Program-made: the position numbers and the translations under genes | The notes under the pieces: model-generated | Databases searched by the model: none | Told to the model about the DNA's origin: nothing | The model's input: only the letters and a program-made list of their open reading frames with translations | Shown: positions 17,841-46,077 of the stretch, in pieces | Position numbering within the stretch: the first letter of the stretch is position 1 | How the letters are laid out: each line of letters begins with the position of its first letter | NCBI RefSeq assembly: GCF_006345805.1 | Contig: NC_043009.1 | Location: forward strand, 3,472,001 to 3,536,000 | Length of the DNA: 64,000 nt | Reading direction: 5' to 3' | From: Octopus sinensis | Lineage: Eukaryota

Positions 17841-18232
17841 TGCGTGGTAAGTAGCTTGCTTACGAACAACATGGTTCCGGGTTCAGCCCTACTGCGTGGC
17901 ACCTTGGGCAAGTGTCTTCTGCTATAGCATCGCGCCGACCAAAGCTTGTGAGTGGATTTGGTAGACGGAAACTGAAAGAAGCCCGTCATATATATGTATA
18001 TACATATAATTATGTGTGTATATGTTTCTGTCTCTGTATTTGTCCCCCCCCCCAGCATCGCTTGACAACCGATGCTGGTGTGTTTACGTCCCCGTCACTA
18101 GCGGTTCTGTAATAAGAGACCGATGGAGAAAGTATTAGGCTTACAAAGGATAAGTCCCGGGGTCGATTTTCTCGACTAAAGGTGGTGTTCCAGCATGGCC
18201 GCAGTCAAATGACTGAAACATATAAAAGAGTA
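17841..18232 (+). mobile_element. SINE family S1
   Basis: Matches the S1 consensus across both halves. Confidence 0.9.
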
Positions 18233-37196: not shown

Positions 37197-37585
37197 ATGC
37201 CACGCACAAAAAATTCAGCAGAACTGTCAGATTTTCAAAGAGATCTTATAGGTGGGCAATCTGAGGCTGGTCTTAGCCAGTGAAAAATTGTCGAAAATAT
37301 TCAAATTCCTATGCTACCGTTCATAGAATTATAGTGCAATTTAAAAGCCAAGGAAATGTATCAACAAATTCTCCTCCCGGCCAACCTGGCCCCTCGGAAA
37401 GGAAGCTTCACTGTTTGAAGAGAATTGTGAAAAATGAACCCCGTTCGAAGGCTTCTAACATTGCAAAACCGCTAGAAGTTAGTCCAAGAACGTGTGTCAC
37501 ATATCTGCATAATCTTGGGTATTATGGACGAGCAGCTAATAAAAAAAAACCTCTCCTTCAACCAATTAACAGCAAAGAAAAGATT
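37197..37585 (+). pseudogene. Tc1-family transposase N-terminal relic
   Basis: MPRTKNSAELSDFQRDLI...GLS...ATVHRII...RIVKNEPR...VSPRT...L...GYYGRAANKKKPLL matches the Tc1 paired-HTH and R...KPLL pattern; stop and frameshift present. Confidence 0.8.
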
Positions 37586-37959
37586 ATGAAATTAGACCTG
37601 TCTATTTACTTCCTGCATATCTGTGTACATATATATGTGTATATATATATATATATTATATATATATATATATATAATATATATATATATATATGTGTAT
37701 GTATAAAGAAAGAGAGAGAGAGAGAGAGAGAGAGCAATAAGGAAATGGTGGGGATCAATACGTAGTATTTATCAATTTTAGACATTATATTATGTCGATT
37801 TATTTACTAAAATGACAATTACAATGTAATTGCAATGCAATAAAGAACACTTGTGTATTAATAATTGGGTATTCTACCAGTAGTATATTGAATAGATATT
37901 ATTTCTTAGTTCGTTGGATTCACAACCTCTAACTTTCTTGGAATATATCCAGTACTTTT

Positions 37960-42281: not shown

Positions 42282-43102
42282 CTAGCAGATTGCCCGCGTT
42301 GCTCGGGGATGAATTGCTTGAAAGTACTGTTAATGATTGCACTGAATTATATGATTATTCAGGCAAATATTGAAATAAGCTTACGGTGGGAGATAAGGAC
42401 TTAACGCCAACGTGTGCCATTGCATTGTTTTGGGGAACCAAATTTCTGATGGGCAACTAACTTTAAGTTTGAGAAAGTGGTGGTGGTAGTCCGGGGTGCT
42501 CAAAGGAATTGAGTACCTCTATTGGATAGTTGATGACGTCCTCTGGTCAGGAGTTGTTTGATAGACTGATATACATCGACTTCCCCAGGATGAGTTTAGC
42601 ATTTCATCATTAATATGGTGAACAGTTTTATTCCTCGGGGCCAGTATAACCTTTTTGCCAATCCAATCCATATTCTGATAATTAGCTTGTAAATCTGGGA
42701 ACACTGCACTCTGAGATCAGAAGGCGTCTTAACAATGGTACAAATGGAATCGATGGCAATATTACCATTTTCATCCCCTGGTATTTTGCCTTCGCCAAGT
42801 GCAAGGAGAGTGTGAGGAAATGCTGGTGATGTGATATTACGTCGCATATGAGCACGCATATTGGTGTGAAGTTTGAGAGTTACTTCCGTTTATTTTTAAA
42901 AATATGCATTAAAATGGAAAAAATGATGGTAAATTATTTGTAAAATCATAGACTCATCGTAGACGCGCGCTAATACCCAGAAGGGCTCGATATGAATCAC
43001 GACTATAAGATACCCGGTTTTGGTAAACTGCATCGCAAAATGTGGGAGTAGTTAGGAATCTAAATCGGAGTAGACAGACACACAACCTTTCTTTTATATA
43101 AA
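42282..43102 (-). mobile_element. Internally deleted Helitron carrying a helicase fragment
   Basis: 3' CCCCGAGCAACGCGGG hairpin plus CTAG|t at 42282; 5' end near 43102; helicase relic in the same orientation. Confidence 0.85.
42390..42880 (-). pseudogene. Helitron PIF1-like helicase fragment
   Basis: KLHTNMR...LLALGEG...VFPDL..NY.N.DW....ILAPRN..V..IN...YPIE.LNS.E.PGLPP..LKLKV are typical RepHel helicase motifs; frameshifted. Confidence 0.88.
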
Positions 43103-43818
43103 TACATACTACACACACACATACATACACACACACACACACACACCACACACACACCACACATACATGCATACATACATACACATAAACCGAGTAAAAA
43201 ATTTCAGTTATCTCTCTCTTTCACACATTACTCTCTCTGTCTCTTCACACACAACTAACAGAAGCACTTCACTTACACAACATACTGTCTGTCTCCCACA
43301 CTCCATCAAACACACACACACACACACACATGTACATCAATGAGTCCCATGCACGGTAACTTCAAAGGAACTTCCCTCGTCATACAATCGCTTTCTCTTA
43401 GTCTCTTTCGCTCTCATTACTTATGTAAAAAATAAAGTTTTTCTATGTGTGTAAAGAGGGGGGGATGCAGAGTGAAAGAATCACTCACTACAGTAAGTCA
43501 ATTACTTTCATTTTATTCGTTGCCCACTGTGTGTGTGCGTTTGCGTGTGGTGTAACCAGACTAAGAAAAGCATTTGACACACACCAGAATGTGAGTTTTC
43601 TGTAAATTTTGCTTAATTGGAGTTTAAATTTTAAAAACTGGACCTGGCATGACGCGATGCATTGTACTCTCAAAAATGCCAGTAAAATTGTAATTGAAGA
43701 AATCTATATTGTAGATTTGTATAACTCCCAAAGGGAGGCAGATAAAATCTGCCTTTTATAATAAGAGATACTTTATTAAACCCTATATCAATTTGTATAT
43801 ATATATATTATATATATA

Positions 43819-44003
43819 GGGGGGGGGCAAAGGAAAATGATTGCGTCTCTCATAGCCTCTCCTCTCCAGTGTAATGATCGCTGCAGAACTTCTACCTGGC
43901 TGCGCCTTGCGGAAAGTTCTTGCTTATGGCCTCTCCTGCACTACTGTGTCCACAGCAGCACCTTCACGCGGTACCCCCCCCTGTTCTCACTGAGCCTGCT
44001 GTG
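43819..44003 (+). ncRNA. HDV/CPEB3-like self-cleaving ribozyme (predicted)
   Basis: P1 G9 (43819-27) with C8T (43974-82); P2 CACAGCAG (43951-58) with CTGCTGTG (43996-44003); P3 ACC/GGT; L3 TTCACGC; P1.1 C43965-G43983; J4/2 CTGA (43990-93, fits CNRA). Confidence 0.72.
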
Positions 44004-44440
44004 TGGCGCGACCGGGTCTTGGCGGTATAACCGGGTGGGCAGACTGGGCTCGTTAGCCTTGGTTGACAGCCAGTCTAGAGAAGGAAAACTCTGACTCCAA
44101 ACCCTCGCTCCGCTGCCTGCGGATGCTCTTGGGAGAGGGAAAGGCTATGGAGTAAACCCAGACAGAAAATCCGGAGTGGAGCCCTGAAGGCGGTAGGGTG
44201 TCGATCTCGACCTTTTCCGGCAACTCCTGCAGCCAACCAGACTCCAAACGTACTGCACTGCATTCCTTTAGATTATGTCTGGGGGCCGAGAGGGAGATCT
44301 GGTGTCTGGGCAGCCCAGTGTCTTCGTTTCCCTACCGCCCAGGCTTGCGCCATGGAGAAACTACTCCATCGATGGAACAAGCTGAGATGGCAGTTACGAG
44401 TTTTAAGCCAGGGTGAATTGGCGTAATCCCGTACATACAT
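43819..44440 (+). mobile_element. ORF-less RTE-like non-LTR element (ribozyme, 5' UTR, short 3' end, (TACA)n tail)
   Basis: GC-rich island starting abruptly at a G9 run after (TA)n; contains GCCAGTCTAGAGAAGGAAAACTCTGACTCCAAACC (about 44069-44103), which I recognise as an RTE-clade 5'UTR motif; ends in (TACA)n. Confidence 0.6.
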
Positions 44441-44488
44441 ACATACATACATACACACATACATACATACACACACAACACACACACA

Positions 44489-44528
<40 letters not shown>

Positions 44529-44547
44529 ACATACACACATACACACA

Positions 44548-44578
<31 letters not shown>

Positions 44579-44585
44579 GTATGTA

Positions 44586-44791
44586 TATTTCAAAATAGAA
44601 AATTACCCTTTAACATGCAATTTTAACATGCTAGATATAGCAGCAAAGATTGCTACGATCCATTATTTTCTGGCAAATTTTGAAGTCCATGAAAAATAAA
44701 GACCTTTATCTTTTAATATATGTATATATATATACATCTACATATATATATATACACACACACTCATATGTATAGATATATAGATATATAG

Positions 44792-44831
<40 letters not shown>

Positions 44832-44838
44832 CATAAAA

Positions 44839-44869
<31 letters not shown>

Positions 44870-44871
44870 CT

Positions 44872-44947
<76 letters not shown>

Positions 44948-45478
44948 ATATATATATATCACATATATATATAGGCGCAGGAGTGGCTGTGTGGTAAGTA
45001 GCTCGTCTACCAACCACATGGTTGCGGGTTCAGTCCCACTGAGTGTGTATTTGTGTGTCTGTGTTTGTCCCCTAGCATTGCTTGACAACCGATGCTGGTG
45101 TGCTTATGTCCCCGATCGGCAAGAGAGACCGATAGAATAAGTACTGGGATTGCAAAAGAATAAGTCCCGGGGTCGAGTTGCTCGACTAATGGCGGTGCTC
45201 CAGCATGGCCGCAGTCAAATGACTGAAACAAGTAAAAGAAAAGAATAAAAGAATATATATATGTACCAGTTTCGCACTAGGGTCGATGTAATCGACTTAA
45301 TGCCTTTGTCTGTCCTTGTTTGTCCCCTCTATGTTTAGCCCCTTGTAGCTAGTAAATATATAGATATATAGATATTTCAAAATAGAAAATTACGCTTTAA
45401 CAGGTAATTTCTACATGCTAGAACTAGCAGCAAAATCTTGGCACGATCCATTATTTTCTGGCAAATTATGAAGTCCCG
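44586..45478 (+). repeat. Diverged ~105-bp direct repeat pair
   Basis: TATTTCAAAATAGAAAATTAC...TTTTCTGGCAAATT.TGAAGTCC at 44586-44690 and 45373-45478. Confidence 0.85.
44973..45250 (+). mobile_element. SINE family S1 with central deletion
   Basis: Head joined to the 3' half, lacking the CORE-like segment. Confidence 0.85.
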
Positions 45479-46077
45479 CAGAGATGTATGTATATGTGCA
45501 TGTACTAGTATTAATACATACATTTTTACTTATTTACGTGTATATATACACGCGTTAGCATATATGTATATCTATCTATACACACACACACACGACAGAT
45601 ATATATACTATATATAATATTTATGTGTGTGTGTGTGTGTGAGTCTGTATAATATGTATGAATGTGTGTATGTATGCATGTATCTATCTATCTAACTATC
45701 TATCAATCTATCCATATATATATATATGCGGATATATTGTACGTGCATGTATTTGTGTGTAAGCATATATCTATGCACATATATATATATACATTTATAC
45801 ATACATACAAACATATATACATGCATACATACATATGTTGCATACACATACACATACACACACACACATATATATTTATAATACCACACATGTATAAATG
45901 CACATTTAGAACACATTCATACACACGGCGTATGTAGATGTATGTATGAATGTATCTATTCTTAGAAATATGTTACATATACACACACGTTTATATATAT
46001 GTACACACATACGTACATACATATCTATATGTATATATATACACATACGTAAATACATATCTATATGCATGTATATA

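What the first reader, a model, noticed from the sequence alone, without database searches (positions are those of the whole stretch)
43819..44003. Predicted HDV/CPEB3-like self-cleaving ribozyme exactly at the 5' boundary of a retroelement
Seen in sequence: the first nine bases of a GC-rich island are G9 (43819-27), matched about 150 nt downstream by C8T (43974-82), giving a G1-U wobble and a terminal C-A opposition. Between and after lie P2 CACAGCAG/CTGCTGTG, P3 ACC/GGT, L3 UUCACGC, a single C-G P1.1, J4/2 CUGA, and a structured ~123-nt J1/2 (AGTGTA/TGCACT and AGAACTT/AAGTTCT helices). Established: HDV-like ribozymes process 5' ends of R2/RTE-type non-LTR elements; mammalian CPEB3 has L3 UUCACGU and a one-pair P1.1; the J4/2 consensus is CNRA. 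Inference: this is a P4-less, CPEB3-like ribozyme that frees the element's 5' end from a co-transcript. I am not aware of such a ribozyme reported in cephalopods. Caveats: P1 is about 3 nt longer than the canonical 7 bp and P2 has a bulged C, so this copy may be decayed.
Basis: partly seen in the sequence, partly recalled or inferred. Interest (0 to 1): 0.85.

Follow-up and report, generated by a model that had tools for sequence, protein, structure and literature searches.

The report
Probable HDV-like ribozyme at element start
The first 185 bases of a GC-rich, microsatellite-tailed insert carry almost every hallmark of an HDV/CPEB3-type self-cutting RNA, far more than chance gives. It breaks the standard in three places, no curated model recognises it, and no second copy could be found to prove it.

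Summary
G9 (43819-27) is the only G run of 8 or more in 64 kb, and it faces C8T (43974-82). Between and after them lie P2 (8 bp), P3 (3 bp), L3 UUCACGC, a G for P1.1, and CUGA just before the P2 3' strand.

With the two runs held fixed, shuffling the rest recreates the core plus P2 in only 1.5e-5 to 9e-5 of trials. In random sequence, motifs of this helix quality occur at most once per 100 Mb.

The core matches the mammalian CPEB3 ribozyme closely: same ACAGCAG in P2, L3 6/7 identical, and P3 changed on both strands so that pairing is kept.

It is not a canonical member. P1 is 9 bp against the usual 6-7, P4 is replaced by 5 nt, J1/2 is 123 nt and poorly structured, and P2 needs a bulge. Rfam gives no hit, and a P4-deleted CPEB3 core model gives E=0.08.

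Long J1/2 and missing P4 have precedents in silkmoth R2 and in abalone. "Retroelement" rests only on the sharp GC boundary, a folded 3' end and a (CATA)n tail. No RT, no second copy and no clear TSD were found.

Verdict: probably a genuine HDV-like ribozyme or its relic, a new member of a known kind. Activity is untested.

The parts
43796..43818 (+). (TA)n microsatellite directly upstream. It would be the leader cut off by cleavage and is possibly the insertion target.
   Evidence: A43818 can pair with U43982 in a slipped P1 register that is 1.7 kcal/mol more stable than the G.U register.
43819..43827 (+). P1 5' strand (G9). The predicted cleavage site is 5' of G43819, which is also the first base of the GC-rich island.
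   Evidence: I14/I22; only G run of 8 or more in the window; composition step.
43828..43950 (+). J1/2 insert of 123 nt. It has a 40-nt unpaired C/U-rich 5' linker, a hairpin domain at about 43868-43943, and a 7-nt 3' linker.
   Evidence: fold -23.6 kcal/mol, z=+0.85, so not unusually stable. The CU tract at 43853-68 can pair with G9 as a competitor at -15.1 kcal/mol.
43951..43959 (+). P2 5' strand CACAGCAG plus C43959. The 7 nt ACAGCAG (43952-58) are identical to the CPEB3 P2 5' strand.
   Evidence: (I23). It is the best partner of the P2 3' strand anywhere in the RNA, at -12.7 kcal/mol.
43960..43972 (+). P3 (ACC/GGT, 3 bp) enclosing L3 UUCACGC. U43963, C43965 and G43968 occupy the conserved L3 positions.
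   Evidence: L3 is 6/7 identical to CPEB3, and P3 differs from CPEB3 (GCG/CGC) at all three pairs with pairing kept. A conserved C and G in L3 are required in R2 ribozymes.
43973..43982 (+). A43973 (J3/1, opposite C43828) followed by the P1 3' strand C8U. U43982 pairs with G43819 as the G.U wobble.
   Evidence: The 9-bp P1 is worth -17 kcal/mol. It is 2-3 positions longer than the published 6-7 bp.
43983..43989 (+). G43983 and U43984 (P1.1: G pairs with C43965, U lies opposite U43964, as in CPEB3), then the 5-nt linker UCUCA where P4 normally sits.
   Evidence: CPEB3 P1.1 is one G-C plus a U-U; abalone ribozyme with 5 nt instead of P4; silkmoth R2 without P4.
43990..43993 (+). J4/2 CUGA, with C43990 as the putative catalytic cytosine.
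   Evidence: CPEB3 has CGAA and the L014 ribozyme has CAAA. Here 2 further nt (G43994, C43995) separate it from the continuous P2 3' strand.
43994..44003 (+). P2 3' strand: G43994 (pairs with C43959), bulged C43995, then CUGCUGUG.
   Evidence: I23; P2 about -9 kcal/mol.
44004..44431 (+). Remainder of the GC-rich body. It has no recognisable coding capacity. The last 100 nt form two hairpins, the second ending at the tail.
   Evidence: no Pfam hit; CpG o/e 0.59 against 0.90 for the window; 3' 100 nt: -32.5 kcal/mol, z=-2.1, 4/200 shuffles.
44432..44580 (+). (CATA)n/(CA)n microsatellite. It is the presumed 3' tail of the element, or the target repeat.
   Evidence: D1. Microsatellite 3' ends are typical of RTE elements, including octopus RTE-2_OV.

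Best explanation
Bases 43819-44003 are, or descend from, an HDV-like self-cleaving ribozyme whose core closely resembles the CPEB3 type. It forms the 5' terminus of a short (about 610 bp plus tail), ORF-less non-LTR retroelement, comparable to R2 SIDEs or to RTE/Dong-R4 derivatives.

Proposed mechanism, inferred rather than shown:
1. The element has no promoter and is transcribed as part of a longer host transcript.
2. G9 pairs with C8U (P1). CACAGCAG pairs with CUGCUGUG (P2). ACC/GGT (P3) presents L3, and C43965 pairs with G43983 (P1.1).
3. C43990 in J4/2 acts as the general acid, with a Mg2+ ion bound at the G43819.U43982 wobble. The chain is cut 5' of G43819, leaving a 5'-OH on the element RNA.
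4. A LINE reverse transcriptase supplied in trans recognises the 3' hairpin and microsatellite and copies the RNA to its cut end, so new copies begin exactly at the G run.

Shown here: the sequence features and their improbability by chance. Inferred: folding, cleavage, co-transcription and mobility.

I put the chance that this particular copy cleaves in vitro at about 0.35-0.4.
For: - All helices and core nucleotides are present, in the right order for the double pseudoknot.
- Conditional shuffle test: 1.5e-5 to 9e-5. Random-sequence rate at this helix quality is at most 1 per 100 Mb. The descriptor is validated on two real CPEB3-type ribozymes.
- The predicted cleavage site coincides to the base with the composition step from (TA)n into the island.
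- Core resemblance to CPEB3: ACAGCAG, UUCACG, an A before P1', CCCCU-GU, and P3 changed at all three pairs with pairing kept.
- The P1.1 pattern (G-C plus U-U) is the same as in CPEB3.
- The oddities have precedents. Silkmoth R2 ribozymes have J1/2 of 216-498 nt and no P4, yet cleave. An abalone ribozyme has 5 nt in place of P4.
- Dong, R4, RTE, baggins, L1Tc and the R2-derived SIDEs use 5'-terminal HDV-like ribozymes.
- RTE and Dong-R4 are the most abundant LINE clades in Octopus vulgaris, and octopus RTE ends in a microsatellite.
- The 3' end folds better than shuffles (z=-2.1) and abuts a microsatellite.
Against: - No Rfam ribozyme model hits, even at E<=10. The custom P4-deleted CPEB3 core model gives E=0.08, rank 3, and a wrong alignment.
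- Plain alignment to CPEB3 is not significant (16 of 100 shuffles score as well).
- P1 is 9 bp (10 positions counting the C.A opposition) against the published 6-7 bp. The motif fails the descriptor with a 7-bp P1 and J3/1 of 0-1 nt.
- CNRA is separated from the continuous P2 strand by 2 nt, so P2 needs a bulge.
- J1/2 is not a stable closed domain (z=+0.85) and has a 40-nt unpaired linker. That arrangement slowed a studied large ribozyme strongly.
- The 185 nt as a whole fold no better than shuffles (z=+0.35).
- Competing pairings exist: the A43818-U43982 slip register (-18.6 against -16.9 kcal/mol) and G9 with the CU tract.
- There is no family evidence at all: single copy in the window, nothing in the protein, metagenome, viral or prokaryote collections.
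- No RT ORF and no convincing TSD.
Confidence: 0.55

Rival explanations
1. The two long inverted repeats (G9/C8U and CACAGCAG/CUGCUGUG) are ordinary structure in the 5' region of a repeat or transcript, for example a protein-binding or stability element. The small core features then fit the HDV pattern by luck, and the RNA never cleaved.
For: Given the helices, the remaining core (P3, L3 U..C..G, G after P1', CNRA nearby) arises in about 1.4e-3 of shuffles (281 of 200,000), which is rare but not vanishing. P1 length, the missing P4 and the bulged P2 all depart from the canon. No covariance model recognises it.
Against: The P2 strands must also sit directly next to P3 and to CNRA, which brings the joint chance down to 1e-5 to 1e-4. 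The extra sequence identity with CPEB3 at unconstrained positions (7/7 of ACAGCAG in P2, 3/3 free L3 positions) is left unexplained.
Confidence: 0.15
2. It is a genuine HDV-like ribozyme but is not tied to a mobile element. It would be a single-copy host ribozyme in an intron or non-coding RNA, acting like the mammalian CPEB3 ribozyme on its host transcript.
For: Only one copy is in the window and none was found elsewhere. There is no RT, no Pfam hit and no clear TSD. The core is CPEB3-like. A CPEB3-type ribozyme outside the known mammalian consensus exists in a metagenomic eukaryote-like contig.
Against: The ribozyme's first base is also the first base of a 610-bp GC-rich block. That block ends in a folded 3' region plus microsatellite, which is the layout of ribozyme-headed non-LTR elements. 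Searchable collections hold no genome of this kind, so the missing copies say little.
Confidence: 0.13
3. It is a pure chance look-alike in GC-rich, homopolymer-containing sequence, picked out by a flexible reading.
For: The relaxed descriptor gives 2-5 loci per Mb in random sequence and three low-complexity hits in this very window. The relaxations were chosen after the fact. The CM tests are negative.
Against: At the candidate's helix quality the random rate is at most 1 per 100 Mb. The conditional test gives 1.5e-5 to 9e-5. The cleavage site also falls exactly on the composition boundary.
Confidence: 0.1

Closest known systems
Mammalian CPEB3 ribozyme (Rfam RF00622)
   Same: G-rich P1 with a G1.U wobble. 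P2 5' strand ACAGCAG pairing with CUGCUG. 3-bp P3. 7-nt L3 UUCACG(U/C). An A before P1', as in human. ...CCCCU followed by GU. P1.1 of one G-C plus a U-U. A 4-nt J4/2 starting with C.
   Different: P1 is 9 bp, not 7. There are 123 nt rather than 0-2 nt between P1 and P2. There is no P4. J4/2 is CUGA, not CGAA. P2 needs a bulge. It is not in a CPEB3 intron. The Rfam model gives no hit, and a P4-deleted core model gives only 14 bits.
Silkmoth (Bombycoidea) R2 ribozymes
   Same: HDV-like core with an exceptionally long J1/2 (216-498 nt) and no P4 stem. They serve to release the element RNA from a co-transcript and cleave weakly in vitro.
   Different: Those elements sit in 28S rDNA, and P1 uses 28S sequence 28 nt upstream of the insertion. 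Here P1 starts at the element's first base and the flank is a (TA)n repeat. P1 there is 6-7 bp.
5'-terminal HDV-like ribozymes of Dong, R4, RTE, baggins and L1Tc
   Same: Cleavage is exactly at the element's 5' end. Dong sits in a (TAA)n repeat and releases the upstream repeat as leader. RTE elements lack promoters and end in microsatellites.
   Different: No RT/EN ORF or other link to any of these clades could be shown here. The element is only about 610 bp.
HDV-like ribozyme of the abalone Haliotis discus (cited in PMC3774820 from Webb and Luptak 2011)
   Same: Mollusc origin, and only 5 nt in place of the P4 stem, which is the same count as UCUCA at 43985-89.
   Different: I could not obtain its sequence, so no direct comparison was made.
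R2 SIDEs (short internally deleted elements)
   Same: Non-autonomous elements that lost the ORF. The review describes their spread as a by-product of ribozyme processing of the 28S co-transcript, using R2 protein supplied in trans.
   Different: The parent element is unknown here, and derivation by internal deletion is only an inference.

Membership tests
HDV-like self-cleaving ribozymes (nested double pseudoknot) | Cleavage-site G1 at the base of P1, paired as a G.U wobble | tested here: met
   G43819.U43982. A slipped A43818-U43982 register is 1.7 kcal/mol more stable in this genomic context.
HDV-like self-cleaving ribozymes (nested double pseudoknot) | P1 of 6-7 bp whose 3' strand follows P3 directly (J3/1 of 0-1 nt) | tested here: not met
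   P1 is 9 bp plus a C.A opposition. With a 7-bp P1, J3/1 would be 3 nt, and the descriptor with P1=7 and J3/1<=1 misses the site.
HDV-like self-cleaving ribozymes (nested double pseudoknot) | P2 of at least 5 bp, forming a pseudoknot with P1 and stacked on P3 | tested here: met
   8 Watson-Crick pairs, 43951-58 with 43996-44003, plus C43959-G43994 across the bulged C43995.
HDV-like self-cleaving ribozymes (nested double pseudoknot) | 3-bp P3 closing a 7-8 nt L3 that carries the conserved U, C and G | tested here: met
   ACC/GGT with L3 UUCACGC.
HDV-like self-cleaving ribozymes (nested double pseudoknot) | P1.1: 1-2 pairs between L3 and the nucleotides just 3' of P1 | tested here: met
   C43965-G43983, with U43964 opposite U43984. 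This is the same pattern as CPEB3.
HDV-like self-cleaving ribozymes (nested double pseudoknot) | Catalytic C at the start of J4/2, directly 5' of the P2 3' strand | tested here: inconclusive
   CUGA at 43990-93 fits C-N-R-A. However, 2 nt lie between it and the continuous P2 strand unless G43994 pairs and C43995 bulges.
HDV-like self-cleaving ribozymes (nested double pseudoknot) | P4 stem-loop (stabilising, but reported to be dispensable) | tested here: not met
   Only UCUCA lies between P1.1 and J4/2. Precedents without P4 are silkmoth R2 and abalone.
HDV-like self-cleaving ribozymes (nested double pseudoknot) | Pairings supported by covariation among relatives | not testable with these tools
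   No second copy in the window or in any searchable collection.
HDV-like self-cleaving ribozymes (nested double pseudoknot) | Mg2+-dependent self-cleavage leaving a 5'-OH on G1 | not testable with these tools
   This needs a bench experiment.
CPEB3 ribozyme family (Rfam RF00622) | Score at or above the Rfam gathering threshold (35 bits) | tested here: not met
   No hit at E<=10 on 3 kb, 231 nt or 66 nt sub-windows. The positive control L014 scored 66.5 bits.
CPEB3 ribozyme family (Rfam RF00622) | Significant match to the CPEB3 core (P2-P3-L3-P1'-J4/2) with P4 removed | tested here: not met
   Custom model R1 gave 14.1 bits, E=0.08, rank 3 in the window, with P2 3' mis-assigned.
Non-LTR retroelement (RTE or Dong-R4 type, or a non-autonomous derivative) | RT/endonuclease coding sequence or recognisable remnants | tested here: not met
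   No ORF of 110 aa or more with an RT character in the window. The element's ORFs have no Pfam hit at E<=1.
Non-LTR retroelement (RTE or Dong-R4 type, or a non-autonomous derivative) | Multiple dispersed copies with a common 5' end and different flanks | not testable with these tools
   Single copy in the 64-kb window. The source genome is not searchable here.
Non-LTR retroelement (RTE or Dong-R4 type, or a non-autonomous derivative) | 3' stem-loop followed by a simple-repeat tail | tested here: met
   The 3' 100 nt fold with z=-2.1, followed by (CATA)n/(CA)n at 44432-44580.
Non-LTR retroelement (RTE or Dong-R4 type, or a non-autonomous derivative) | Target-site duplication | tested here: inconclusive
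   Only a 7-nt low-complexity match, TGTATAT at 43794 and 44582.

The most novel reading that the evidence does not exclude
The element carries a true relative of the CPEB3 ribozyme lineage, with shared P2 and L3 sequence and a P3 changed on both strands so that pairing is kept. That would mean CPEB3-type ribozymes are an old, retroelement-borne family present in a mollusc-like genome. It would suggest that the mammalian intronic ribozyme was domesticated from such an element. This branch would also work with a 9-bp homopolymeric P1 and no P4, widening the accepted geometry of the fold.
Probability: 0.12. Interest if true: 0.75.

Novelty: new member of a known kind. Interest (0 to 1): 0.45.

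Why it matters
If confirmed, it would give the abundant RTE and Dong-R4-type elements of cephalopod-like genomes a defined 5'-processing mechanism, which matters for elements proposed to be active in the octopus brain. It would add a natural HDV-like ribozyme with an unusually long P1 and no P4. It would also offer a non-mammalian sequence with CPEB3-like core letters that bears on where the CPEB3 ribozyme came from.

If it is only a relic, it is still a useful marker of full-length 5' ends when annotating this repeat family.

Tried and rejected
- **Rfam cmscan** at E<=10 on 42800-45800, 43800-44030 and 43945-44010, and at gathering threshold on the whole window. No ribozyme family matched.
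- **Nested MFE folding** of the 185 nt and of J1/2 alone. Neither is more stable than shuffles, so thermodynamics neither helps nor decides.
- **Plain local alignment** of CPEB3 positions 8-38 to the window. Score 13 against a null of 11.6 +/- 1, not significant.
- **P4-deleted CPEB3 core covariance model.** E=0.08 and mis-aligned.
- **Looking for more copies:**
  - blastn of the element against the window;
  - protein-word searches with two ORFs of the element;
  - exact-protein look-ups;
  - exact core patterns in prokaryote genomes and viral contigs.
  All were empty.
- **Generic CPEB3-like pattern** in viral and metagenome contigs. Of 20 loci, 18 are chance matches without a P2 3' strand, and 2 are a real CPEB3-type ribozyme unrelated to this element.
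- **Verifying the host taxon** with a transposase-like ORF. No hit.
- **Supplements of two octopus repeat papers** searched for the core sequence. Nothing found.
- **Papers not held.** Webb and Luptak 2011 and Webb 2009 are not in the library, so the abalone ribozyme and the original descriptor could not be compared directly.
- **Other readings rejected:**
  - hammerhead, twister or another ribozyme class (no Rfam hit);
  - a tRNA/7SL/5S-derived SINE head (no Rfam or ARAGORN hit);
  - a DNA transposon or LTR (no terminal inverted or direct repeats).
- **The other long C run** in the window (C10 at 18044-53) lies in unrelated SINE-like sequence.

Full report
**1. What is in the sequence**

The window is AT-rich (GC 0.35) and full of microsatellites. 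A (TA)n tract ends at 43818. At 43819 a GC-rich block begins (GC 0.49-0.59) and runs to about 44431. It is followed by 150 bp of (CATA)n/(CA)n.

- G9 at 43819-27 and C8T at 43974-82
- CACAGCAG at 43951-58 and CTGCTGTG at 43996-44003
- ACC at 43960-62 and GGT at 43970-72
- TTCACGC at 43963-69
- G43983
- CTGA at 43990-93

G9 is the only G run of 8 or more in 64 kb. C runs of 8 or more occur twice. The other one (18044-53) lies in unrelated SINE-like sequence.

**2. Is it more than chance?**

I wrote a descriptor for the HDV-like topology. It requires:
- P1 starting with G paired to U
- a 3-bp P3
- L3 of 7-8 nt with U, C and G at the conserved positions
- a G after P1' for P1.1
- C-N-R-A before the P2 3' strand
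- P2 of at least 6 bp
- J1/2 of at most 150 nt
- at most 100 nt where P4 sits

It finds the human CPEB3 construct and a metagenomic CPEB3-type ribozyme at the correct bases with canonical settings.

The candidate is missed when P1 is 7 bp and J3/1 is 0-1 nt. It is found only with a 9-bp P1 and 2 extra nt after CNRA, which is equivalent to a bulged C in P2.

Results with that relaxed descriptor:
- Random sequence gives 2-5 loci per Mb.
- The real window gives three further hits, all in TA/TG microsatellites with weak A-U and G-U helices.
- Requiring at least 5 G-C pairs in P1 and at least 7 Watson-Crick pairs in P2 (the candidate has 8 and 8) gives 0 hits in 100 Mb at GC 0.35 and 1 in 100 Mb at GC 0.55.
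- Holding G9 and C8T fixed and shuffling everything else 200,000 times gives the core plus P2 of 6 bp or more in 9e-5 of trials, and P2 of 8 bp or more in 1.5e-5.

The relaxations were chosen after seeing the site. Even after discounting for that by a factor of ten or more, chance is a poor explanation. In addition, the predicted cleavage site falls on the first base of the composition step.

**3. Resemblance to CPEB3**

I took the human CPEB3 ribozyme from the oligonucleotide printed in bioRxiv 10.1101/2022.09.22.508989 and the Rfam consensus.

| | P1 5' | J1/2 | P2 5' | J2/3 | P3 | L3 | P3' | J3/1 | P1 3' | P1.1 | P4 region | J4/2 | P2 3' |
|---|---|---|---|---|---|---|---|---|---|---|---|---|---|
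| CPEB3 | GGGGGCC | - | ACAGCAG | AA | GCG | UUCACGU | CGC | A | GCCCCU | GU | P4 stem-loop | CGAA | UUCUGCU |
| Window | G9 | 123 nt | C-ACAGCAG | C | ACC | UUCACGC | GGU | A | CCCCCCCCU | GU | UCUCA | CUGA | G(C)CUGCUGUG |

The P2 5' strand contains the same ACAGCAG. L3 is 6/7 identical. P3 is changed at all three pairs with pairing kept. P1.1 has the same G-C plus U-U pattern reported for CPEB3.

Formal tests of family membership nevertheless fail:
- Rfam gives no CPEB3, HDV or other ribozyme hit at E<=10, even on 66-231 nt sub-windows.
- A plain local alignment is not significant.
- A covariance model of the CPEB3 core with P4 removed scores the site 14.1 bits (E=0.08), third in the window, with the P2 3' strand mis-assigned.

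So it works like a CPEB3-type core, but it cannot be filed as a member of that family.

**4. Departures from the canon, and precedents**

- **P1 length.** Published P1 helices are 6-7 bp (Webb 2016; R2 survey). Here P1 is 9 bp plus a C.A opposition. I found no precedent for this.
- **Slipped register.** Because both strands are homopolymers, a slipped register using the flanking A43818 is 1.7 kcal/mol more stable than the G.U register. G9 can also pair with an internal CU tract.
- **J1/2.** It is 123 nt, folds no better than shuffles (z=+0.85) and leaves a 40-nt unpaired linker. In a studied large ribozyme, long unstructured linkers cost up to about 175-fold in rate.
- **P4.** It is replaced by 5 nt.
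- **Precedents.** Silkmoth R2 ribozymes have J1/2 of 216-498 nt and no P4, and still cleave 10-25 % in vitro. [quoted passage not shown]
- **Thermodynamics.** Nested-fold energies are neutral overall: the 185 nt give z=+0.35. P1 is worth about -17, P2 about -9 and P3 about -1 kcal/mol. The double pseudoknot is competitive with the alternatives but does not dominate.

**5. Is it the 5' end of a retroelement?**

For:
- There is a base-exact composition boundary.
- The 3' 100 nt fold better than shuffles (z=-2.1) and end in a microsatellite.
- The literature shows 5'-terminal HDV-like ribozymes in Dong (in TAA repeats), R4, RTE, baggins and L1Tc, and describes ORF-less R2 SIDEs that spread as a by-product of ribozyme processing.
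- RTE and Dong-R4 are the most abundant octopus LINE clades, and octopus RTE ends in a microsatellite.

Against or missing:
- There is no RT/EN ORF and no Pfam hit.
- There is no second copy in the window.
- Nothing was found in any collection I could search.
- The only TSD candidate is a 7-nt low-complexity match.
- The host taxon could not be verified.

The retroelement reading is therefore plausible but inferred.

**6. Literature on novelty**

My searches found no paper reporting an HDV-like ribozyme in a cephalopod. The giant squid Rfam annotation lists only hammerheads. The two octopus repeat papers do not mention ribozymes. HDV-like ribozymes in molluscs and in these LINE clades are established. 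This would therefore be a new member of a known kind, with an unusual P1.

**7. Verdict**

| Reading | Confidence |
|---|---|
| Genuine HDV-like ribozyme or its relic at the 5' end of a short non-autonomous non-LTR element | about 0.55 |
| This particular copy cleaves in vitro | about 0.35-0.4 |
| Non-catalytic structure that happens to fit | 0.15 |
| Real ribozyme not linked to a mobile element | 0.13 |
| Pure chance | 0.10 |

The decisive data are a genome-wide family alignment and a co-transcriptional cleavage assay with a C43990U control.

No viral sequence was used or reproduced. Comparisons relied on the mammalian CPEB3 sequence taken from a paper and on Rfam output.

Noticed in passing
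L014:8822-8900 and L013:4863-4941 (JGI metagenome contigs Ga0210059_1000457, 51.6 kb, and JGI24158J21664_10037919): A complete CPEB3-type ribozyme (Rfam RF00622, 66.5 bits, E=5e-18) in an ORF-poor, eukaryote-like contig. It differs from the mammalian consensus by a compensatory P1 change (GGGGGUC/GACCCCU), a longer P4, J4/2 CAAA and an unrelated 5' flank. [quoted passage not shown] The source organism is unknown.
   Followed up: partly
window 44586-44692 and 45373-45476: A 105-bp segment is duplicated in direct orientation at 87.5 % identity. Each copy is preceded by microsatellite sequence. The first copy starts right after the element's (CATA)n tail.
   Followed up: partly
window 44975-45240: A GC-richer block that looks like a tRNA-derived SINE head and body. 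It is not called as a tRNA by ARAGORN or Rfam. Related pieces appear elsewhere, for example near 18050-18110 on the minus strand.
   Followed up: no
window ~31056 (+), ~45805 (-), ~62356 (-): The relaxed HDV-like descriptor also fires in TA/TG microsatellites. These are low-complexity false positives built from A-U and G-U pairs. They are a warning for any descriptor-only ribozyme scan of this genome.
   Followed up: yes
window 43819-44094: Reading frame 0 is open from the very first base of the island for 92 codons, across the whole ribozyme region, with an ATG at 43837. There is no Pfam hit and no homologue in the protein search, so it may be coincidence.
   Followed up: partly
window 43819-44431: CpG observed/expected is 0.59 in the island against 0.90 for the window as a whole, while GpC is 0.98. 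This is compatible with past methylation of a repeat, but it was not pursued.
   Followed up: no
window 37280-37765: A 161-aa ORF whose N-terminal part looks like the DNA-binding region of a Tc1/mariner-type transposase (my reading only). The protein search found no homologue.
   Followed up: partly
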